This document shows positions 11,620-55,765 of a stretch of DNA of 64,000 nucleotides, piece after piece. This DNA is from Octopus sinensis (Eukaryota). Below the pieces are notes generated by a model. The model had not been told where the DNA came from. It made no database searches and saw only the letters and a list, made by a program, of their open reading frames with translations. The translations under genes were made by a program, and so were the position numbers. How positions within the stretch are numbered: position 1 is the stretch's first letter; each line of letters opens with the position of its first letter. Location of the stretch: the NCBI RefSeq assembly GCF_006345805.1, contig NC_042999.1, positions 155,434,001 through 155,498,000 of the forward strand, in the 5' to 3' direction.

Positions 11620-12050
11620 AAAAAGGTGGCGAGCTGGCAGAAACGTTCTGAGTTCAAATTCCACAGAGGTTGACTTTGTCTTTCATCATTTCGGGGTCGA
11701 TAAATTAAGTACCAGTTGCATACTGGGGTCGATTTAATTGACTGGTCCCCTCCCCAAAAATTTTGGGCCTTGCGCCTAGAGTAGAAAAGAATATTTTAAA
11801 GGCAGCGAACTGGCAGAAACGTTAGCATGCAGGGTTAAATGCTTAGTGGTATTTCATCTGTCTTTACATTCTGAGTTCAAATTCCACTGAGGTTGACTTT
11901 GTCTTTCATCCTTTCAGGATCGATAAATTAAGTACCAGTTACGTATTGGTGTCGATCTAATCAACTGGCTCCCTCCCCAAAAATTTCGAGCCTTGTGCCT
12001 AGAGTAGAAAAGAATATTTTAATTGCAGCAAGCGGGCAGAAACGTTAGCA
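11620..12050 (+). mobile_element. Head-to-tail multimer of S2 SINE
   Basis: Two near-full units plus a third head, joined at gcctagagtagaaaagaatatttt. Confidence 0.8.
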
Positions 12051-24884: not shown

Positions 24885-25450
24885 GGTGGCAAGCTGGCAG
24901 AATTGTTAGCGTGCCGGGCGAAATGCTTAGCGGTATTTCTTCTGCTGCTATGTTCTGAGTTTAAATTGCGCCGAGATCGACTTTGCCTTTCATCCTTTCA
25001 GGGTCAATAAAATAAGTATCAGTTACACACTGGGGTCAATAAAATCGACTTAATCCGTTTGTTTGTCCTCTCTGTGTTTAGTAAAGAAATAGGTATTTCG
25101 TCTGCCGTTACATTCTGAGTTCAAATTCCACTGAGGTCGACTTGGCTTTTCATCCTTTTGGGGTTGATTAAATAAGTACCAGTTATGCACTGGGGTCGAT
25201 GTAATCGATTTAATCCGTTTGTCTGTCCTTGTTTGTCCCCTCTGTGTTTAGCCCCTTGTGGGGAGTAAAGAAATAGGCATTTCGTCTGCCGTTACGTTCT
25301 GAGTTCAAATTCTGCCGAGGTCGACTTTGCCTTTCATCCTTTCAAGGTCAATAAATAAAATACCAGTTACGCACTGGGGTCGATGTAATTGACTTAATCC
25401 CTTTGTTTGTCCCCTCTATGTTTAGCCCCTTGTGGGCAATAAAGAAATAA
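24885..25450 (+). mobile_element. Triple tandem S2 SINE
   Basis: One head followed by three ~185-bp core/tail units, each restarting at gtatttcgtctgccgttac. Confidence 0.85.
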
Positions 25451-26754: not shown

Positions 26755-27237
26755 TCTGTGTTTGAACTCTTTATTTTCCTTATATTATATATTATTTTGC
26801 TGAGGCATGGTGATTACCAATAACCTGATGTTAGAACTCATATACATATGCTTCAGAACAAAGTGTCTAAAGCTCCAGTGAAGCTATAGAGTGATACTCA
26901 AGCACTCAACTATGAGTGCATTGCATTTTGTAGCAGAAACAGCTGTAAGCCAATGAAGTTCATGACATAATTCCTTCTTTCCTTGTCATTTATTTAATTT
27001 CTTATATATATGTGTGTGTATAATTTTGAACTAATCTGTTGTGTGTTTAATGCTATTCATTTTTGGATGTACATCTACTGTTTTCAACAATACCAATAAA
27101 CCTGTAAATGTATAGTCACTATATTTCCAACTAGCATGTTCTGAATTTATAACACTTCTTTAGGTTTTTAATTTATAAAATTTAATCAAAATATTGTTAT
27201 TCTAATTAATGTTATTTTTTTTTCATTTTCTCCTTAG

Positions 27238-29246
27238 GAATCAATGGAAGACCAAGTCTTGAGAACAATGCAAATTTTGACAAATCTTTCCAGAAATTTT
27301 TAAAGCAATTCCAATATCGAGGTGCATCTGTTGCTTTGATGCGCCAAGGGAAACTCTTATACTCCCATGGTTATGGCAGTACACAGAATAATGTTAAAAT
27401 GACACCAGAAGTCTTGTTTCCAGCTTCAAATATTTCTAAATTACTCACTGCTGTATCCGTTCTTAAACTTGTTGAAAATGGTAAAGTGAACCTTACTGCT
27501 AAAGTCTTTGGTAAGTTTGGAATTTTGAATCACTTACGACCTTGGAGCATTTTTCGAACTGACAACAGGCTGTATGACATTATAGTCGATGACCTTCTTC
27601 GGCATGCTGGTGGCTGGGATTCAGCTATGCCACCAATGTTTGATCCAGTTCTGAATTCTATTTACTTAAAAAATGGTTATCGCATTCCAAACATCACTTC
27701 CATCATGCAGTTAAAGAACACTGCTGAAATGAAGGATATTTTCAGATACATGATGTCGATTCCACTGAATTTTAAACCAGGAACGAAATCAGTTCATTCT
27801 CATCTTGGTTATGTTATTCTGGACCAAATTATTGAGAAAGTTCAAAATTACGATTATCCAACATTTGTAAGGAAAAATATTTTAGAGCCTTGTGGAATGT
27901 GGCATACAAGATTCGGAAAACATATGAAAGAAAACAGGATAAAGAATATGGTTAAACGTAGCTTGGTCGGAAACTTTAATACAACTTATTCTCTACACCT
28001 AGAGAGGGAGGTGGTCTCTCTCACTGATGGCTGGTATACCAATGTTTATGATATTATGCGCTTTTTTCGATGCTTGGATCATACTGGTACACATCGATTA
28101 CTTAAAAAATCTTCCATCAAAAGTCTCTTGGCAAAACCAAGAAAAATGAAAGCTTCAGGCTCATGGGTTGGTGCTAACCTAAATGTGAACAAACATGGTC
28201 GAGTTTGTCTGGAAGGAGATGGCATAATTGATGGTATGCTGTTGTGCCACCGGAACTTCTTACAAACGGTTCAGAATCCAGGTAATTCCTCATATATGTC
28301 TTCAGAGACATTTGTTATGCTATTAGTTGGTGGTCACAATAAACCATTACCAGTTCAAAACTTCATGAATTATTTCAAAGATTGGTCGCAAAATGGTGCT
28401 AATTACTTCTCTTATGATTTGGCCGATATTCGGGTAGGGCATGTAGGAGTTAACGAACAAATTATTAAATACAAGTTGTCTGAACACCATATTTCAGCAT
28501 ATGTCAATGCTATTAAAGACCAACACTTCAAAATTGAATGGATAAATGCTTTTGAGTATAATAGAGAATCTTATTTTTCTGTTATCTCTAAAATAAACCC
28601 AGATGAAAGTCTTAGTTCTTTCTATCTGGAGCATGGGCTTGACGAGAAGGGTTTGCTCCACTTCAAACATCTTTATTCCAAGGAAAATGTATATCTGTCT
28701 TTATTACAGAGCTATATCAGTTTCGCACACACAGACAAAAACAGATATATGGCACTATTTGATACGGTGAAAGAGGAACCTGTTGATATTCGATTTGGAA
28801 TTCGACAATATTCCCAATGTTACAAATTGTTTGCTCAAGTTTATAATGAGAAGGGTTATGTCCCAAGAGTCCAAAGTTTTGTCCACATTGATCAAGAACC
28901 ACAAGTGTGTTTCATTTTGGAAAAGAAACCTGTAAAAGAGTACAAAGAATACATAGATATTTCCCTGAAGGAACTGACTGAGAGCGTTGTCTCAAATGCT
29001 AAGGCACACCGTGTTATGACATACTTGGACACTTCCAGCAAGTATAAAAGACCAAGATTTTCAGTCATTTTCAGGAAAGACCCTTCCAGACAAGGCACAT
29101 TCAAAAACAATGTCGAGATATCACAGCTTGAAGATATCATTGCCGATGGGTACTTGAAGGACAGTTTTTTCCCAAAACTAATTGCTGGATATTCAGATAA
29201 GAAAGGCACATTATATTTTGCCATTTATATGGAAAGAATCTTATAA
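27238..29246 (+). CDS. Terminal coding exon of a beta-lactamase-family (serine hydrolase/PBP fold) protein with five C-terminal BTRD1-like repeats; catalytic motifs degenerate; N-terminus on unidentified upstream exon(s)
   Basis: The 636-aa ORF (27336-29246) stays open upstream to a splice acceptor (ttttttttcattttctccttag|GA, AG at 27236-27237, phase 1), adding INGRPSLENNANFDKSFQKFLKQFQYRGASVAL. Family motifs: GASVALMRQGKLLYSHGYG, FPASNISK, LLRHAGGWD, PLNFKPGT, HSHLGY, ILEPCGM. Repeat-like C-terminus from 28455. Stop TAA at 29244-29246. No repeats interrupt it. Confidence 0.9.
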
Positions 29247-29779
29247 ATTCCTCCTTTGTTTGTCTTTTATATTTAATATACACACCATACAGATTGATCA
29301 TACATCACCAAATATATGCTATAACAAAATTTTATGTAAATGACATCTCAAAGACAAAGAAAAATTGTTCCTATCCAACTGGAATTTATTCTGTATTATT
29401 TAAAAAAAAAATCAAAATACTTTTCTCACAAGTACCAGTTAAAACGATTTTGCAAATACTTGTCTTTTAATGAATGCTTCTACAAAATTGATGACAGAAT
29501 GTAAGAATTTATGATTTTTGTACATACCAATTTCTTACAAAAGCAGCAAAGCTTCCACATGTAGATGGAGGTGAAATGAGATTTTACTGTATTCATGCCT
29601 TTCTCAAGAGAAGGTGAAAGGGCTTGAAGTCATGGGAGTTAGGTTTCCAAGAATTTTGGTTTATTCTATAAATAGAATCCTTTATTTGAGTAATTAGTGT
29701 AAATATATGAATAGAATAATTCTTGTGTATATTCATTGTAATAATTAAGATTATTATAATGGTAATAACCATAATAATC

Positions 29780-29940
29780 ACATTGTTGATCTGCATCTTT
29801 GGATTCTTGTAGAATACATGGTAACACTTTTCTGCGGGTCAACAAAGTGTCTCCGTTTTGAATAACCTTCAGACTTTTAGGTAGAATTTTGGGTGTTGTG
29901 CTAAATGCACCAATTACCACAGGGACAATTGTCACCTTTT
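29780..29940 (-). mobile_element. REL LINE 3' fragment
   Basis: TIVPVVIGAFSTTPKILPKSLK. Confidence 0.6.
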
Positions 29941-30049
29941 TGTTCTACAATCTATTATTATTATCATTATTATTATTATTTTGGTTTGGCTCAGGTTCGG
30001 TCTTATTCCTGGTAGAATTTATGTGGGTAGTGGGTTACTACCTGTAACC

Positions 30050-30600
30050 TTAGGTATCACAAGTTTTCAGCAGTCTTTCAAATGTTTCGAAACCTCCTGA
30101 TAATCCTTACTGTCTTGAAGAGACAAACTTTCTGTAGGAGCTCTACAGGGTATTGTAGCCCAATCTCCTCCAGCCATTTGTCTATATCTTTGCTTACTGT
30201 TCCCAAGGCACCAATTATTATAGGTACGACCTTGACAGTTCCCATGTTCCAAATTCCTCCTATTTCCAATTTTAAGGAATTGTATTTAAAAAAATTTTTC
30301 TTCCTCATTCTTTACAATCCTGGAATCAAACAGGCATGATGGGTCAATAAGTAAGTAACTTTGCTTTTCCTTATCTATAATTGTTATTTCTGGTCTATTA
30401 TTTTCTAACTTCTTGTCTGTTTGAATAGGAAAATCCCACAAAATCTTACATTTCTCTGACTCCAGTACTCTTTCGACTCGGTGATTGTACCATGTGTTTC
30501 CAGTTTCAAATCTCCATTTCTGACACAGTTTCCAGTGTAAATCTTTTACAACCTGGTCATTCATCAATTTTTTATATTCTTCCTGCACCAACTTATTATT
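30050..30600 (-). mobile_element. R4/Dong-like REL LINE 3' fragment with (TAA)n tail
   Basis: LHWKLCQK...WYNHRVERVLESEKCKILWDFPIQTDKKLENNRPEI and VKVVPIIIGALGTVSKDI...LLQKVCL; frameshifted. A sister fragment lies at ~44290-44520 (+). Confidence 0.85.
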
Positions 30601-31045
30601 ATCATTATTATTAAAGCAGCCAACTGCTAGAATTGTTTGGACACTGGCTAAAATGCTTGTCTGCATTTCGTCAGTCTTCACGTTCTGAGTTCAAATTCTG
30701 CTGAGGTTGACTTTGCCGTTCATCCTTTCGGGGTCAATAAAATAAGTACCAGTTGAGCACTGGGGTCGATATAAATGACTTACCCTCTCCACCAAACTTT
30801 CTGGCACTGTGCCAAAATTTGAAATCATTATTATTATTATTCTATGTTTGACTTTTTCTTTACATTTGCACAAGCTGGCTCCAAGTCTCACCCAGAGACC
30901 TCAAGAGACAATTTGGAAGTTTATGTTGGTATTATGCCTAGGGTGCCATATATTTGGTCTTGTACTTAGTGTTGTATGTCTAAAAAACCATACGAAAATT
31001 ATGTTTGTTTTAAAACTTGAGATTACGTAGAAAGTATTTTGCGTA

Positions 31046-35618: not shown

Positions 35619-37050
35619 ATCGCACAGTATACAATATTGTGAGGTTGTTGATTGAAGATATTGTGTCTACCGGGGTTTTATACTTTCTGTCAAGTTACAA
35701 CAAGGACCTCAGACTTACAGTACTTTACACAATATGCTTGCAGTTCCAAGTAATGCCGACTTTTGCAATACATCTAGATTGTAGGGTATTTCTAAGGTTT
35801 TCAGATGTTTTTTTCAGATTGGCTGTTACTGAACCCAATGCTCTGATGACATCATCATCATCATCATCATCGTTTAGCGTCCGTTTTCCATGCTAGCATG
35901 GGTTGGACAATTATTATTATTATTATTGTTATTATTACAATTTATTCTAAAGTTTTTATATCAATATTTTTTGTATTTTTAGGAATTCTGTGAAATATTT
36001 CTTCTTATTTTTTTAATTTTAATGACAGAATAAACACACTTTCAACACAGAAGCAAAACCTCCATTAACAGAGTTGGTATTTCTTTGATAGCTAATATCA
36101 AACATTAGTGCAACAATCTCAAATAAAACATCATAAATAAATCTTGCTTTTGATCTTCTTTACGGGTTTTATACAGAATGGTCTTCTATGAAATCTACTT
36201 AATTTTCTTAATTAAACCTAATCAATTAGTAAGGTTTCTTTCATCATCATCATCATCGTTGTCATCTGTTTCCATGCATGCGTGCATCATACAGAATTTA
36301 TTGAGACAGATTTTCTGCAGCCAGATACCTTTCCTGTCATACTCACCTGTTTCCAGGTAAGGCAATATTTCCTTATGGCCAGACATGTTTTCACAGAAGA
36401 CTGGAAATGAACTACGTTGTTTATATAATATGATATCAATATAAAGGTATACACAAAACACACATACCACACATATATATACATAAATGTGTGTGTATGT
36501 GTATGTATATATGGATATATGTGTATGTAGGTTTATACACACGCACACGCACATATATAAAAGAATATATATATCATTATCATCATCATCATCATCATTT
36601 AACATCCGTTTTCTATGCTGACATGAGTTGGACAGTTTGACTGAAGTCAGGAGAGCCAGCAGCTGCACCAGATTCTAATCTGATCTGGCAATGTTTCTAC
36701 AGCTGGATGCCCTTCCTAACACCAACCATTCTGAGAGTGTAGTGGGTGCTTTTTACGTGCCACCGGCACTGGAACCAGTCAGGTATCCCTGTATTGATCA
36801 CGTTCAGACAGTGCTTTTTACGTGCCACCAGCACAAGAGCCGGTCAGGTGGCCCTGGCATCGATTACATTCAGTTAGTGCTTTTTTATGTGCCACCAGCA
36901 TGGGAGCCAGTCAAGGGGTACTGGCATTGACCATGTTTGGATGGTGCTTTTTATGTACCACTGGCAAAGGAGCCAGTCAGTGGGTACTGGCATCAGCCAT
37001 GTTCAGATGGCGCTTTTTATGTGCCACCGGTAAGGAAGCCAGTCAGGTGG

Positions 37051-39702: not shown

Positions 39703-41799
39703 AATCATCATCATTACCATCATTATTATCATCAGTTGTGGTATGTTGATGTCATGTCTCAGGTGATCGAGATCATTCGACTGGCTGCTGCTGATGTTGC
39801 TGCTCTATTTCATTACCTTTTGTAACAAAAGACTACATATTGTATTTTGTTTTGTGTGTGTGCGTGTGTATGTGTGTGTAGCAATGTGTGGAATGTTAAT
39901 CATGTTACTGGAATGTCTGCTTCAAATCATGAACTTATTTTTCACTTTCTGTTGTTTTTCTTCTTCACCTTTTATTTCTTTAAAATCTTATCATTTTGAT
40001 TGTTCTTTTCTGAGGTGAAATAATAATAATAATCATCATCATCATTATCGTTTTGATGTCCGTTTTCTGTGCTAGCATGGGTTGCACAGTTTGACTGAGG
40101 TCTGGAGAGCCAGTGGCTGCACTAGGTTCCACTCTGATCAGGCACTGTTTCTACAGCTCGATGCTCTTCCTAACACGCCAACCACTCCGAGAGTGTAGTG
40201 TGTGCTTTATACATGCCACCAGCACAGGAGCCAGCCAGGGGGCCCTGGCATCGATCACGTATGGAGAGTGCTTTTTACGTGCCACTGGCACAGGGGCCAG
40301 TCAGGGGGTACTGATATCACCCACGTTCAGGTGGTGCTTTTTACATACCACTAGCACAGGAGCCAGTCAGGGCTATGATATTGGTTTTACTTAACTGAAC
40401 AGATCTTCTCAAGCACATCATATCGCCCAACACATCAGGAGTACTCTTAACTGGGCCAGACATGCATGGCTGTGATCTCACTTTAGTTGCCAGGTCTTCT
40501 CAACCACAGCATATCTCCAAAGGTCTTGGTCTCCTGCCATTGTCACTGTGAGGCCCAATGTTCAAAGGTAGACCCAACAAATAAAAACACTAGTGAGATA
40601 TTGCAACTGAGAGATTAAAGTGTGCCCCAAAGCCAAGGTATATAACTCTGCTTGCCTCAGTCAGCTAAGCTAACAAGCGAGCAGGTAATACTGCTATTTC
40701 ATTTATGCATTTGTAGTTGGTAGTTTGTTGGTTCTTTAAAAGTATTCTGATCTCCATAATTAGCACAATTCTTCCATTCTTCTTAACATGTGAGAACCTA
40801 AAAATGAATGCAACTTGGCACTTTACAATAATTTCAAGAATAGGAGGCAAAGTGGCTGAGTTCCTTTTGAGCATTGGGCCTCAGGGACGCAATGTGGCTA
40901 AGCTCCTTTTGAGAATTGGGCCTCACAGAGGCAATGACCAAGACCTTTGGCATTATGTCATGCTTGAGAAGAAGACTCATCAAGCCGAGCAAAATCGCAG
41001 TCGTGGTACCAGTGTCATGCAAATGGCACCCATGCCAGTTGCACATAGAATTACTCATTACACTCTCAGAGTGGTTGGTATTAGGAAGGGCATCTTGACA
41101 TAGAAATCTATGCCAAATCAGACTGGAGTCTGGTGCAGCCTTCCAACTTGCCAGCCCTGGTCAAACCTGCCAACCCATGACAGCACAGACAACAGACATT
41201 AAATGATGATGATGATGATGATGATGAATGGACATGACAAAATCATTAGAAATATATAGAACCAGTTTTACTACACTAGCATGGGTTAGATGGAGGAGAA
41301 GGATATTTGAGACAGGGTTTTACACACACACTCACACACACACATATATGCCAGGCTCAAAAATCAAAGTACTGGGTTCAATTTGTTCAACTAAAATTCT
41401 TCAAGTCAGTGCCCCAGAATGGCCTCAGTCTAATGATTGAAACATATAAAAGACAAAAGAGTTGAGTCCCACTATGTAGCACCTTGGGCAAGTGTCTTCT
41501 ACTATAGCCTCGGGCTGACAAAAGCCTTGTGAGTGGATTTGGTAGATGGAAACTGAAAGAAGCCTGTCATATATATTTGTGTGTGTCTGTGTTTGTTCTC
41601 CCCTCCATCACTTGACAACTGATGTTGGTGTGCTTATGTCCCGTAACTTAGCGGTTTGGCAAAAGACCCTAACAGAAAAAAGTACTAGGCTTACAAAGAA
41701 TAAGTCCTGGGCTTCATTTGTTCAACTAAAGGCAGTGCTCCAGCATGGCTGCAATCAAATGGCTGAAACAAGTAAAAGGATAAAAGTAAATGAATAAAA

Positions 41800-42382: not shown

Positions 42383-43844
42383 GAGCAGAAAGGTTGCAAG
42401 CGTAAGTGCAGAGGTACCAAGGATCAACTTTTGATAGACAAAACTGTACTTAGAGACTGCAAGAAGAGGAAAAGTAACTTAGCCACGTCATGGATCGACT
42501 ATCATAAGGCATATGATATGATCCCACATTCTTGGATTATGGAATGTATGAACCTATTTGGTATTGTATCGAATGTTGAGCGATTGCTTGGAAAAAGTGT
42601 GGTGAATTGGAGGACGGACCTGATGGCATACGGAAGAAGTTTAGAGACAGTAGAAATCAGGAGGGGCATCTTCCAAGGGAACTGCTTGTCTCCACTGATC
42701 TTTGTACTGTGCTTGATGCCGCAATGTATTCAAAAGCTGCCAACAAGAAGTCAACCATTTGTTATTCATGGATGACCTCAAACTTTATGGTAAAGATGAA
42801 GCCCAAGTCAGTTCCCTCATCGATACAATGCATACCTTCTGATATCAGAATGGAGTTCAGACTGAGAAAGTGTGGTGTGTTAGTCTTAAAGATAGGCAAA
42901 ATCAAATGTATGGACAGGCTAACGATACTGTTGGGGGAGGTTATGAAGCAAGTAGAAGAGACAGGCTATAAGTACTTGGGGATATTGGAAATGGATAGAT
43001 TGATGGAGAAAGAAATGTCAGAAAAATATAAGGTGGAGTACTTGCGCAGACTGAGACTGATCCTTAAGTTGAAATTAAACGGACGGAATAAGATTGAAGC
43101 TATCAACACCTGGGTGGCTTCACTCCTTAGATATGGAGCAGGGGTAATCACATGGACAGTAAATGATCTAAACTGCTTAGACAGAAAGACAAGGAAGTTA
43201 CTAACCAGGTATGGAACACTCCACCCAAAAAGGGACACAGACAGACTGTATGTACCAAGAAAAAGAGAGGGAAGAGGACTTATTGGATGTGAACACAGCA
43301 TTAGAGCGGAAGAAAACAACAGAGCATGTCCATTGGACACTCTACAAGTATGGACTTGACAGAGCAAAAACTTGGTACAACCACAAACCTGAAGGCATAA
43401 TCGAAAATAGATATGCAAAGAGCCTATGGGATTTTATGATTCAGTGCGACCATGAGATAGAGAATAGGAAACCAGACATAGTCTTAATTGAGAGGGAAAG
43501 CAAACTATCATAGATATAGCATGACCAGCTGACAACAAGGTATGCGATAAGGAAGAAAGAAAAGTCGATAGATATGACAGATTATTTTGGGAGGTTAAAC
43601 AGTTGTGGTTGATGAAAAAGTTGGTAGTAGTACTGATAATTGTCGGAGCCCTGGGAACAGTAAGTAAAAATCTTGAGAAGTACATGGAACAAATAAGGGT
43701 GAAGCACTTGCAGAAAACAGCACTGCTTGGAACTGCTTGAATACTCTGGAAGGTGCTCGAAAATTAAGGGCTGTTACCTTAGTTTACTGATAGTGAACAG
43801 CTGACACTGTAGTACATCTCCAGCGTTAGAAGCTGTGCAAAGGC

Positions 43845-52349: not shown

Positions 52350-53245
52350 CCCGCCCCCCCCCCCCACCCCCAGCACCAATACCGATGAACCCGCCCCCCC
52401 ACCCCCAGCACCATACCGATGAACCCGCCCCCCCCCACCCCCACCACCAATACCGATGAACCCGCCCCCCCACCCCCAGCACCATACCGATGAACCCGCC
52501 CCCCCACCCCCAGCACCAATACCGATGAACCCGCCCCCCCACCCCCAGCACCAATACCGATGAACCCGCCCCCCCACCCCCAGCACCAATACCGATGAAC
52601 CCGCCCCCCCCACCCCCAGCACCAATACCGATGAACCCGCCCCCCACCCCCAGCACCAATCCGATGAACCCGCCCCCCACCCCCAGCACCAATACCGATG
52701 AACCCGCCCCTCCACCCCCAGCACCAATACGATGAACCCGCCCCCCACCCCCAGCACCAATACCGATGAACCCGCCCCCCCCACCCCCAGCACCATACCG
52801 ATGAACCGCCCCCCACCCCCGCACCAATACCGATGAACCCGCCCCCCACCCCCAGCACCAATACGATGAACCCCCCCACCCCCAGCACCAATACCGATGA
52901 ACCCGCCCCCCCCACCCCCACCACCAATACCGATGAACCCGCCCCCCCCCACCCCCACCACCAATACCGATGAACCCGCCCCCCCACCCCCACCACCAAT
53001 ACCGATGAACCCGCCCCCCACCCCCACCACCAATACCGATGAACCCGCCCCCCCACCCCCAGCACCAATACCGATGAACCCGCCCCCCACCCCCACCACC
53101 AATACGATGAACCGGCCCCCACCCCCACCACCAATACCGATGAACACTGTTCTCACCCCCCACCACCAATACCGGTGAACTCTGTTCTCACCACCACCAC
53201 CACCAATACCGGTGAACACTGTTCTCACCCCCACCACCAATACCA
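52350..53245. repeat. C-rich/G-rich ~34-bp minisatellite (copy 1), about 23 core units
   Basis: Unit agcaccaataccgatgaacccg(c)n-a-ccccc; the last units diverge (gtgaacactgttctc). Confidence 0.95.
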
Positions 53246-54879: not shown

Positions 54880-55765
54880 GGTGCCCCGCCCCCCCCCCCC
54901 ACCCCCAGCACCAATACCGATGAACCCGCCCCCCCACCCCCAGCACCAATACCGATGAACCCGCCCCCCCGCCCCCCACCACCCCCAGCACCAATACCGA
55001 TGAACCCGCCCCCCCACCCCCAGCACCAATACCGATGAACCGCCCCCCCCCACCCCCAGCACAATACCGATGAACCCGCCCCCCACCCCCAGCACCAATA
55101 CCGATGAACCCGCCCCCCCCACCCCCAGCACCAATACCGATGAACCCGCCCCCCACCCCCAGCACCAATACCGATGAACCCGCCCCCCACCCCCAGCACC
55201 AATACCGATGAACCCGCCCCTCCACCCCCAGCACCAATACCGATGAACCCGCCCCCCCCCCACCCCCAGCACCAATACCGATGAACCCGCCCCCCCCCCC
55301 CCCAGCACCAATACGATGAACCCGCCCCCCACCCCCAGCACCAATACCGATGAACCCGCCCCCCACCCCCAGCACCAATACCGATGAACCCCCCCACCCC
55401 CAGCACCAATACCGATGAACCCGCCCCCCCCCACCCCCACCACCAATACCGATGAACCCGCCCCCCCACCCCCACCACCAATACCGATGAACCCGCCCCC
55501 CCCCACCCCCACCACCAATACCGATGAACCCGCCCCCCACCCCCACCACACCAATACCGATGAACCCGCCCCCCCACCCCCAGCACCAATACCGATGAAC
55601 CCGCCCCCCACCCCCACCACCAATACCGATGAACCGGCCCCCACCCCCACCACCAATACCGATGAACACTGTTCTCACCCCCCACCACCAATACCGGTGA
55701 ACTCTGTTCTCACCACCACCACCACCAATACCGGTGAACACTGTTCTCACCCCCCACCAATACCA
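54880..55765. repeat. Same ~34-bp minisatellite (copy 2)
   Basis: Same unit and a similar order of variants as copy 1. Confidence 0.95.

What the first reader, a model, noticed from the sequence alone, without database searches (positions are those of the whole stretch)
28455..29243. Five tandem BTRD1-like repeats fused C-terminal to the beta-lactamase domain: microbial-type architecture in an animal gene
Seen: five ~50-aa units, each ending in an aromatic-small-hydrophobic-aromatic-like strand (YFSVISK, RYMALFD, QVCFILEK, RFSVIFRK, YFAIYME), with HGLD and KGYVP-type elements. Established, from recall: Pfam BTRD1 (polyglycine hydrolase-like structural repeat) occurs with beta-lactamase domains in bacterial serine hydrolases and fungal polyglycine hydrolases, the latter with repeats N-terminal. 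Inference: the family may derive from an ancient horizontal transfer, consistent with both domains lying in one intron-free exon. The repeats may be the ligand or substrate-recognition module.
Basis: partly seen in the sequence, partly recalled or inferred. Interest (0 to 1): 0.7.

Follow-up and report, generated by a model that had tools for sequence, protein, structure and literature searches.

The report
Inactive beta-lactamase-like octopus protein with repeats
This stretch is the tail of an octopus gene for a probably secreted protein that joins a catalytically dead beta-lactamase-type domain to a five-repeat barrel first seen in a fungal protease; the gene family is old and spread across marine invertebrates, so it is not a recent bacterial import into molluscs.

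Summary
Window 28458-29240 (+) encodes five ~50-aa strand-helix-strand-strand units at the C-terminus of a 668-codon exon (27238-29246), and the N-terminal half of that exon is a PF00144 beta-lactamase domain. Pfam BTRD1 does not hit the octopus protein itself. Homology rests on three other results: 33 of 39 family members hit BTRD1; a cephalopod-only profile aligns collinearly with bacterial 5xBTRD1 domains (E 4.6e-10); and the predicted C-terminal domain has one significant PDB match, the polyglycine hydrolase N-domain (7TPU, TM 0.67).

Proteins with this domain order occur in molluscs, nemerteans, a brachiopod, echinoderms, a hemichordate and amphioxus. They form one clade (NJ bootstrap 78%) and mostly share the same gene structure, a signal-peptide exon followed by one large exon. 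The bacterial relatives examined carry the repeats N-terminally, as the fungal enzyme does. The family therefore predates the mollusc lineage, and a transfer before Bilateria stays open.

The window protein has Asn in place of the catalytic Ser and His-Ser-His in place of Tyr-x-Asn, yet evolves under purifying selection (dN/dS 0.24). It is most likely a secreted non-catalytic binding protein. An octopus paralogue keeps the catalytic motifs.

The parts
27236..27237 (+). Splice acceptor AG after a pyrimidine-rich tract, ending a phase-1 intron. The signal-peptide exon is not in the window.
   Evidence: Sequence. The O. bimaculoides orthologue has exon 1 (20 codons + 1 nt, then GTAAGA) 63.2 kb upstream of the large exon. 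Searches for exon 1 in the 27 kb upstream in the window found nothing.
27238..29246 (+). Large terminal coding exon: 668 codons plus stop, encoding everything except the signal peptide.
   Evidence: Open frame. It is 96% identical in protein to O. bimaculoides LOC106876528. dN/dS 0.24 against that orthologue.
27276..28394 (+). Beta-lactamase / penicillin-binding-protein-like domain. Pfam match covers residues 13-303; the fold extends to about residue 385.
   Evidence: PF00144 E 1.1e-31. PDB sequence matches 2qmi, 4gdn, 7tpu. Foldseek matches to PBP/class C folds.
27429..27440 (+). Remnant of the S-x-x-K motif, here N64-I-S-K67. The nucleophilic Ser is replaced by Asn, which also creates an N-I-S glycosylation sequon.
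   Evidence: Family alignments. HMMER alignments place N64 opposite the first residue of the aligned S-V-S-K of 7tpu (numbered Ser343...Lys346 in PMC9912923) and opposite the motif Ser of 2qmi, with K67 opposite the motif Lys.
27795..27803 (+). Remnant of the Y-x-N motif, here H186-S-H188.
   Evidence: Aligned with the Y-S-N of 7tpu, numbered Tyr447-Ser-Asn449 in PMC9912923. Family table.
28458..28595 (+). BTRD1-like repeat 1 (residues 407-452, EHEE).
   Evidence: Models. Collinear hhalign with bacterial 5xBTRD1 domains.
28620..28763 (+). BTRD1-like repeat 2 (residues 461-508), which opens with HGLD.
28779..28925 (+). BTRD1-like repeat 3 (residues ~514-562). It contains KGYVP, and its first strand is poorly predicted.
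   Evidence: (pLDDT <50 for 513-526).
28941..29078 (+). BTRD1-like repeat 4 (residues 568-613).
   Evidence: The aligned repeat passes Pfam BTRD1 in the bivalve-type relative P0011 (species not named).
29088..29240 (+). BTRD1-like repeat 5 (residues 617-667).
   Evidence: The aligned repeat passes Pfam BTRD1 in Mactra P0010 (34.1 bits against a cutoff of 23).

Best explanation
Window 27238-29246 is the large second coding exon of an octopus gene, the orthologue of O. bimaculoides LOC106876528. Its product is a two-domain, probably secreted protein. The N-terminal domain has a penicillin-binding-protein / class-C-beta-lactamase fold. The C-terminal domain is a barrel of five BTRD1 (strand-helix-strand-strand) repeats, homologous to the N-domain of fungal polyglycine hydrolases and of bacterial BTRD1-serine hydrolases but placed on the other side of the hydrolase domain. 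The gene belongs to a family present across Bilateria, so it was inherited vertically at least since the protostome-deuterostome ancestor. In this octopus copy the acyl-enzyme machinery is gone: the nucleophilic Ser is Asn, and Tyr-x-Asn is His-Ser-His. The whole protein is nevertheless under purifying selection. I infer that it works as a non-catalytic binding protein. The old substrate cleft and/or the repeat barrel would hold a ligand, perhaps a peptide or glycopeptide of the kind the active paralogue cleaves, rather than hydrolysing it. Shown here: gene structure, domain identity, homology, taxonomic spread, residue replacements and sequence constraint. Inferred: secretion (from the orthologue's first exon), loss of activity, and the binding role. 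The confidence given is for the whole statement; the structural and evolutionary parts alone would rate about 0.9, the binding role about 0.5.
For: Exon and orthologue. PF00144 domain. BTRD1 homology rests on four results. Bivalve-type relatives (Mactra and two unnamed sequences) pass the Pfam cutoff, at positions that align with repeats 4 and 5 where the best stretch was reported. 33 of 39 family members match PF17660, best E 4.4e-19. An HMM of the animal repeat domain hits the N-terminal repeats of Gimesia P0059 at 5e-20, and Pfam scores those as five BTRD1 repeats at 172 bits. A cephalopod-only profile against bacterial 5xBTRD1 domains gives probability 96.7%, E 4.6e-10 over 260 collinear columns. 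Fold: five EHEE units, and 7tpu_A is the only PDB match below E 1e-3 (E 2.4e-6, TM 0.67, 269 columns, against next best E 0.016 and TM 0.11). PMC9912923 describes that domain as five EHEE repeats of 44 residues forming a barrel. Distribution: Tegillarca, Solemya, Mactra, Haliotis, Aplysia, Octopus, Argonauta, Tubulanus, Lineus, Lingula, Antedon, Apostichopus, Glandiceps, Branchiostoma. Core clade bootstrap 156/200. The signal-peptide exon plus one big exon is seen in Octopus, Mactra, Haliotis and Antedon, and probably Glandiceps. Dead motifs. Constraint: 31 non-synonymous against 32 synonymous changes, dN/dS 0.24, similar in both domains. 79% identity to Argonauta.
Against: Loss of activity is inferred from motif replacement only. 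Ser63 and Ser66 flank the Asn, and two His replace Tyr and Asn, so an altered catalytic arrangement cannot be excluded by sequence. No ligand, expression pattern or localisation was examined. The signal peptide is seen only in the orthologue, because exon 1 lies outside the window. Both models are of moderate confidence (pLDDT 71-73, shallow alignments of 11-13 sequences). The tree is neighbour-joining on 316 columns, with no taxon labels for most sequences. The function of the BTRD1 barrel is unknown even in the solved fungal enzyme.
Confidence: 0.6

Rival explanations
1. The family entered animals by one ancient horizontal transfer of a bacterial BTRD1-serine-hydrolase gene before the bilaterian radiation. 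It then gained a signal-peptide exon and had its domain order swapped. This rival concerns origin only and is compatible with the functional explanation above.
For: The nearest non-animal relatives of the hydrolase domain that could be placed are bacterial, and several of them also carry five BTRD1 repeats. The gene is nearly intron-free in several phyla, with a single phase-1 intron right after the signal peptide, a structure often seen in domesticated transferred genes (general knowledge). None of the 30 proteins whose sources were looked up, about 20 of them with an organism name, came from vertebrates, arthropods, nematodes, cnidarians, sponges or non-animal eukaryotes.
Against: No bacterial protein with the animal domain order was found among the 150 best matches. 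Most database representatives are unnamed, so absence from non-bilaterians and protists was not tested. Branchiostoma and Lingula members have 4 and 6 coding exons. The tree does not resolve a specific bacterial donor clade. The PGH N-domain fold is reported from all kingdoms (PMC9912923).
Confidence: 0.3
2. The octopus protein is still an enzyme, with a re-wired active site (for example Ser63 or Ser66 as nucleophile and His186/His188 as base) and a new substrate.
For: Purifying selection acts on the hydrolase domain as strongly as on the repeats. Lys67 of the S-x-x-K motif is kept in the octopod copies. Tyr to His keeps a potential general base (inference).
Against: The nucleophile position itself is Asn in both octopods and in the related (probably decapod) copies, one of which (P0003) has also lost the Lys. 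Other lineages of the family replaced the same Ser by Gly, Ala, Asp, Glu or Gln. This is the pattern of repeated loss of catalysis, not of a conserved alternative mechanism.
Confidence: 0.12
3. The region is a decaying pseudogene or a bacterial contaminant in the assembly.
For: None beyond the lost catalytic residues and the bacterial affinities of the two domain families.
Against: There is an uninterrupted 668-codon frame in a window that is only 31-34% G+C here, and dN/dS is 0.24. A splice acceptor precedes the exon, and the orthologue sits at the matching position with 89-94% identical non-coding flanks in O. bimaculoides. The window is full of animal-type microsatellites and tandem or dispersed repeats.
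Confidence: 0.02

Closest known systems
Fungal polyglycine hydrolases (chitinase-modifying proteins), e.g. Fvan-cmp, PDB 7TPU (PMC9912923)
   Same: Same two domain families. These are a five-repeat EHEE barrel (Foldseek TM 0.67 to the predicted octopus C-domain) and a PF00144 hydrolase domain (7tpu is the third-best PDB sequence match, E 2.7e-12 to 6e-18). Both are secreted proteins (secretion is inferred for the octopus protein).
   Different: Domain order is reversed: the repeats are N-terminal in PGH. PGH keeps Ser343, Lys346, Tyr447 and Asn449, whereas the octopus protein has Asn, Lys, His and His. There is no detectable sequence match between the repeat domains. The PGH substrate is a plant chitinase linker, which has no obvious counterpart here.
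Bacterial BTRD1-serine hydrolases, e.g. Gimesia aquarii WP_197998529 (P0059), annotated 'serine hydrolase / penicillin-binding protein 4'
   Same: Five BTRD1 repeats plus PF00144. The repeat domain is homologous at the profile level. These proteins are among the closest non-animal relatives of the hydrolase domain.
   Different: The repeats are N-terminal and score strongly against Pfam (172-213 bits). The genes are intronless in a bacterial gene context (shown for P0120). Their catalytic motifs were not examined here.
The paralogous cephalopod proteins (O. vulgaris P0009, Argonauta LOC115227542 P0008, and unnamed P0006 and P0007)
   Same: Same architecture and length, 53-56% identity, and the same two-exon gene structure.
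   Different: They keep S-I-S/A-K and Y-S-N and are therefore probably active hydrolases.
Gigasin-6, an oyster shell-matrix protein
   Same: It is a secreted molluscan protein with a beta-lactamase domain that its authors regard as an inactive lactamase relative with a non-enzymatic role in shell matrix and larval settlement (PMC5854119, PMC9456362). This is a precedent for non-catalytic use of the fold in molluscs.
   Different: It is shorter (563 aa). The part of its sequence printed in the supplement (about the first 240 residues) lacks this family's conserved blocks by eye. Neither membership nor presence of BTRD1 repeats was tested.
LACTB (mitochondrial serine beta-lactamase-like protein of animals)
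   Same: It is an animal PF00144 protein and matches the hydrolase domain (E about 1e-12).
   Different: It has no BTRD1 domain, is mitochondrial and filament-forming, has an intact catalytic Ser, and belongs to a different subfamily.

Membership tests
Pfam PF17660 BTRD1 (polyglycine hydrolase-like structural repeat) | Match to the Pfam HMM at or above the gathering score (23 bits) | tested here: not met
   There was no PF17660 match for the window protein, its C-terminal 263 residues or any single unit, even at E<=10. The feature is met by relatives: P0010, P0011 and P0012 scored 34.1, 28.6 and 24.9 bits, and 33 of 39 family members matched at E<=0.01.
Pfam PF17660 BTRD1 (polyglycine hydrolase-like structural repeat) | Homology to canonical BTRD1 repeat arrays shown by profile comparison | tested here: met
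   hhalign of 8 cephalopod sequences (window first) against 6 putatively bacterial N-terminal repeat domains (one named, Gimesia; three confirmed as 5xBTRD1 by Pfam) gave probability 96.7%, E 4.6e-10 over 260 collinear columns. With bivalves added, E was 2.6e-14. The family HMM hits Gimesia repeats at 5e-20, and also in shifted registers.
PGH N-domain fold (7TPU residues 13-262) | Five EHEE structural repeats of about 44 residues closing into a barrel | tested here: met
   Predicted models only. Both models show five EHEE units. Foldseek against the PDB gives 7tpu_A at E 2.4e-6, TM 0.67, rmsd 4.4 over 269 columns, with no other match below E 0.01. The fold definition is from PMC9912923.
Pfam PF00144 Beta-lactamase (serine beta-lactamase / PBP-like hydrolases) | HMM match above the gathering score (27 bits) | tested here: met
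   110.7 bits, E 1.1e-31, residues 13-303.
Active serine beta-lactamase / DD-peptidase-type hydrolases | S-x-x-K motif with the nucleophilic Ser | tested here: not met
   The motif is N64-I-S-K67. The Asn aligns with the nucleophile Ser of the S-V-S-K in 7tpu (numbered Ser343 in PMC9912923) and with the motif Ser of 2qmi.
Active serine beta-lactamase / DD-peptidase-type hydrolases | Y/S-x-N motif (class C Tyr150 equivalent) | tested here: not met
   H186-S-H188 aligns with the Y-S-N of 7tpu, numbered Tyr447-Ser-Asn449 in PMC9912923.
Polyglycine hydrolases (fungal cmp enzymes) | Repeat domain N-terminal to the hydrolase domain | tested here: not met
   The order is hydrolase then repeats in the window protein and in all 49 animal-type proteins scored.
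Polyglycine hydrolases (fungal cmp enzymes) | [quoted passage not shown] | not testable with these tools
   This needs a biochemical assay. The missing nucleophile makes the activity unlikely.
Horizontally acquired bacterial gene in molluscs | Restricted to the recipient lineage and nested within a donor clade | tested here: not met
   Members occur in six bilaterian phyla. The core animal clade is monophyletic with 78% NJ bootstrap. No donor clade is resolved.
Horizontally acquired bacterial gene in an early animal ancestor | Absent from non-bilaterian animals and other eukaryotes, with bacteria as sister group | tested here: inconclusive
   The nearest outgroups that could be placed are bacterial.

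The most novel reading that the evidence does not exclude
A bacterial BTRD1-serine-hydrolase gene was captured once by an early animal and re-ordered so that the repeat barrel follows the hydrolase domain. It then diversified into a bilaterian-wide family of secreted proteins that has lost catalysis many times independently. The octopus copy would be one such pseudoenzyme, now acting as a secreted receptor or lectin-like binder, for instance for microbial peptides or cell-wall fragments.
Probability: 0.2. Interest if true: 0.6.

Novelty: new variant of a known kind. Interest (0 to 1): 0.4.

Why it matters
The five-repeat barrel of polyglycine hydrolases is a recently solved fold with no known function. 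The paper that solved it listed only fungal and bacterial relatives among its top 50 hits. This analysis shows an uncharacterised, conserved family in at least six phyla of marine invertebrates that combines this barrel with a beta-lactamase-type domain in the opposite order. Within the family the catalytic residues have been replaced repeatedly while the proteins stay under selection. That gives natural pairs of probably active and inactive paralogues within one animal, for example in Octopus. Such pairs could be used to find out what the barrel binds and what the hydrolase cuts. The result also corrects an attractive but premature horizontal-transfer story: any transfer must predate Bilateria.

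Tried and rejected
(1) I searched for the signal-peptide exon in the window by fuzzy peptide matching and found nothing. The O. bimaculoides gene shows why: its intron is 63 kb and the window holds only 27 kb upstream.
(2) Self-comparison of the five units by hhalign was almost uninformative.
(3) The sequence profile of the C-terminal domain against the PDB gave no 7tpu match, only one chance-level hit.
(4) Foldseek with the full-length model was dominated by beta-lactamase folds and said nothing about the repeats. A separate model of the C-terminal domain was needed.
(5) The search for homologous proteins with the C-terminal alignment A2 returned no hit at all, not even the family's own members. 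With A3 it returned only the already known molluscan proteins. Both appear to be limits of the word index.
(7) I considered Gigasin-6 as a possible characterised member. The part of its sequence printed in a supplement does not show the family's conserved blocks, so it is cited only as a precedent.
(8) Literature searches for BTRD1, PF17660 and beta-lactamase plus transfer in molluscs found no description of this animal family.
(9) The antisense ORF 28892-29224 lies inside the coding exon and was rejected as a chance ORF.
Full report
WHAT IS THERE. The finding lies inside one long open frame on the + strand. The mechanical ORF runs 27336-29246. The frame is open further upstream, to a pyrimidine tract and an AG at 27236-27237, so the exon is 27238-29246: 668 codons counted from 27240, plus a stop. 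The product is 96% identical to O. bimaculoides LOC106876528 and 79% identical to an Argonauta hians protein, so the window is octopod genomic DNA.

In O. bimaculoides the gene has two coding exons. Exon 1 has 20 codons plus one base, encodes MDPLRKLSFWIVTLLTLGLS, and is followed by GTAAGA. It lies 63.2 kb upstream of the large exon. The window holds only 27 kb upstream, which explains why I could not find exon 1. The gene as a whole does have one phase-1 intron, just after the signal peptide.

THE TWO DOMAINS. Residues 13-303 match Pfam PF00144 (Beta-lactamase) at E 1.1e-31. The best solved relatives by sequence are the Pyrococcus PBP homologue 2qmi, FmtA-like 4gdn, and the polyglycine hydrolase 7tpu.

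The C-terminal 265 residues give no Pfam hit at all in the window protein, whether whole or cut into the five units, even at E<=10. The five units also barely resemble each other at profile level: only R2-R4 reaches E 8e-4. It is confirmed indirectly, by four independent routes.

(i) The bivalve-type relatives (Mactra and two unnamed sequences) pass the Pfam gathering score for PF17660, at positions that align with octopus units 4 and 5. In a 39-member alignment of the family, 33 members match PF17660, with a best E of 4.4e-19.

(ii) An HMM built from the animal C-terminal domain hits the N-terminal region of a Gimesia aquarii serine hydrolase at 5e-20, and also in registers shifted by whole repeats. 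Pfam scores that region as five BTRD1 repeats at 172 bits.

(iii) A profile made only from cephalopod sequences, with the window sequence first, aligns collinearly over 260 columns with an alignment of six such N-terminal repeat domains (Gimesia plus five unnamed, bacterial or metagenomic). The probability is 96.7% and E is 4.6e-10.

(iv) AlphaFold2 models of the whole protein (pLDDT 71) and of the C-terminal part alone (pLDDT 73) both give five strand-helix-strand-strand units. Searched against the PDB, the C-terminal model has exactly one match below E 1e-3: the N-domain of 7tpu_A, at E 2.4e-6, TM 0.67, rmsd 4.4 A over 269 columns. The next hit has E 0.016 and TM 0.11. The 7TPU paper describes that domain as five quasi-identical EHEE repeats of 44 residues, with little sequence conservation between repeats, closing into a barrel (PMC9912923). 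That is the pattern seen here, including the weak self-similarity.

WHO ELSE HAS IT. A full HMMER scan of 1.84 billion cluster representatives with the family profile found about 45 representatives covering both domains in the same order. These were followed by tens of thousands of plain PF00144 proteins.

Looking up 30 representatives gave named members from bivalves (Tegillarca, Solemya, Mactra), gastropods (Haliotis, Aplysia), cephalopods, nemerteans (Tubulanus, Lineus), a brachiopod (Lingula), echinoderms (Antedon, Apostichopus), a hemichordate (Glandiceps) and amphioxus. One further C-type protein (P0131) lies on a 79.6-Mb eukaryotic chromosome. No named hit came from vertebrates, arthropods, nematodes or non-bilaterians, but most representatives carry no name.

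In a neighbour-joining tree of the hydrolase domain (160 sequences, 316 columns), 48 animal sequences form one clade with 78% bootstrap. Its crude internal order runs from deuterostomes through nemerteans to molluscs. Cephalopods have 100% support. A second animal clade (Lingula, a second Argonauta gene, P0131) also has 100% support. Whether the two animal clades are sisters is unresolved.

The structure of a signal-peptide exon followed by one large exon recurs in Mactra, Haliotis, Antedon, probably Glandiceps, and the O. vulgaris paralogue. Branchiostoma has four coding exons and the Lingula gene six, each still with all the repeats in the last exon.

WHERE THE MICROBIAL RELATIVES DIFFER. 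Among the 150 best hits, seven proteins carry the repeats on the N-terminal side of the hydrolase domain. Pfam confirms five strong BTRD1 repeats followed by PF00144 in the three tested. One is from Gimesia (Planctomycetota), one sits in an ordinary bacterial gene neighbourhood, and one is on a metagenome contig. Fungal 7TPU has the same order. I found no bacterial protein with the animal order. The domain pair is thus shared with microbes, but the arrangement in the window is, as far as sampled, an animal one.

ORIGIN. These data place the family at least in the last common ancestor of protostomes and deuterostomes. A recent or mollusc-specific transfer is excluded. A single older bacterium-to-animal transfer remains possible. 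In its favour are the bacterial nearest relatives, the near absence of introns, and the lone intron after an added signal-peptide exon. However, no donor clade is resolved, and I could not test for absence from non-bilaterians or other eukaryotes. I put this at about 0.3.

In the family alignment the S-x-x-K motif reads N-I-S-K in the window protein and its octopod orthologues. The Y-x-N motif reads H-S-H. HMMER alignments to 7tpu and 2qmi put Asn64 opposite the nucleophilic Ser (Ser343 in 7tpu), Lys67 opposite Lys346, and His186/His188 opposite Tyr447/Asn449.

A paralogue present in O. vulgaris and Argonauta, and related sequences that are probably from decapods, keep S-I-S/A-K and Y-S-N. Across the family the nucleophile has been replaced many times, by Gly or Ala in bivalves, Asp or Glu in an unnamed clade, and Gln in a nemertean, while deuterostome and many other members keep it.

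Despite the loss, the octopus gene is constrained. Against O. bimaculoides there are 31 non-synonymous and 32 synonymous differences, giving dN/dS 0.24, with similar values in the hydrolase half and the repeat half. The flanking non-coding DNA is 89-94% identical.

HOW IT MOST LIKELY WORKS. Shown: it is a two-domain protein, its orthologue starts with a signal-peptide-like hydrophobic exon, it lacks the acyl-enzyme nucleophile and general base, and it is under purifying selection. Inferred: it is a secreted pseudoenzyme that binds rather than cleaves. Either the former substrate cleft or the repeat barrel, or both, would act as the recognition surface. The authors of 7TPU suggested exosite binding or protein-protein interaction for the barrel.

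The Ser-to-Asn change creates an N-I-S sequon at the old nucleophile position. If glycosylated in the secretory pathway, it would further close the site. This is speculative. Oyster Gigasin-6 is a precedent in molluscs for a secreted, apparently inactive beta-lactamase-fold protein with a structural or signalling role. I did not establish that it is related beyond the shared fold.

VERDICT. The evolutionary interpretation needs correcting. This is an old, bilaterian-wide, uncharacterised family with an animal-specific domain order. The window copy is a catalytically dead member. I rate it as a new variant of a known kind, of moderate interest.

Noticed in passing
window 52355-53217 and 54890-55739: There are two arrays of the same 35-bp C-rich minisatellite (unit CCCGCCCCCCCACCCCCAGCACCAATACCGATGAA), each with about 24-25 copies at 88-91% matches, starting about 2.5 kb apart (about 1.7 kb of sequence between them). 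They account for the jump to 54-56% G+C and GC skew of -0.44 to -0.56 at 52-56 kb, and for the long artefactual Gly/Trp-rich ORFs on the minus strand.
   Followed up: no
window 11646-12050, 24932-25412: Repeats with 160-223 bp periods, at two loci, share a core (…TTCTGAGTTCAAATTCCAC(A/C)GAGG/ATCGAC…CATC(A/C)TTTCA…ACCAGTTAC…CTGGGGTCGA…). They look like a dispersed SINE-type element of the octopus genome. Related 66-bp tandem units are at 36745-37045 and 40202-40372.
   Followed up: no
window 42607-43359 (+) and 30286-30681 (-): Two ORFs of 250 and 131 aa resemble retroelement ORF2 fragments by eye. Neither matches any Pfam family at E<=0.01.
   Followed up: partly
window 29247-30838: The 1.6 kb after the stop codon is 93.8% identical to O. 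bimaculoides, more than the intron upstream of the exon (89.4%). The first + strand AATAAA after the stop is at 30736. Together these suggest a 3' UTR of about 1.5 kb.
   Followed up: partly
window 27429-27437: Replacing the catalytic Ser with Asn creates an N-I-S N-glycosylation sequon exactly at the former nucleophile position. The same N-I-S is present in the O. bimaculoides and Argonauta orthologues and in P0003-P0005.
   Followed up: no
related proteins P0060 (Argonauta LOC115210556), P0064 (Lingula), P0131: This is a second, distinct animal clade with the same order (hydrolase, then five repeats) and intact S-I-S-K and Y-S/C-N motifs (checked in P0060 and P0064). It has 100% bootstrap as a group, and its members have introns (six coding exons mapped in Lingula). 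Cephalopods therefore carry at least three genes of this architecture.
   Followed up: partly
tool behaviour: the search for homologous proteins with the C-terminal alignment A2 scored 4162 candidates and reported none at E<=0.01, although full-length family members in the database contain this domain. This negative result should not be taken as absence of homologues.
   Followed up: no
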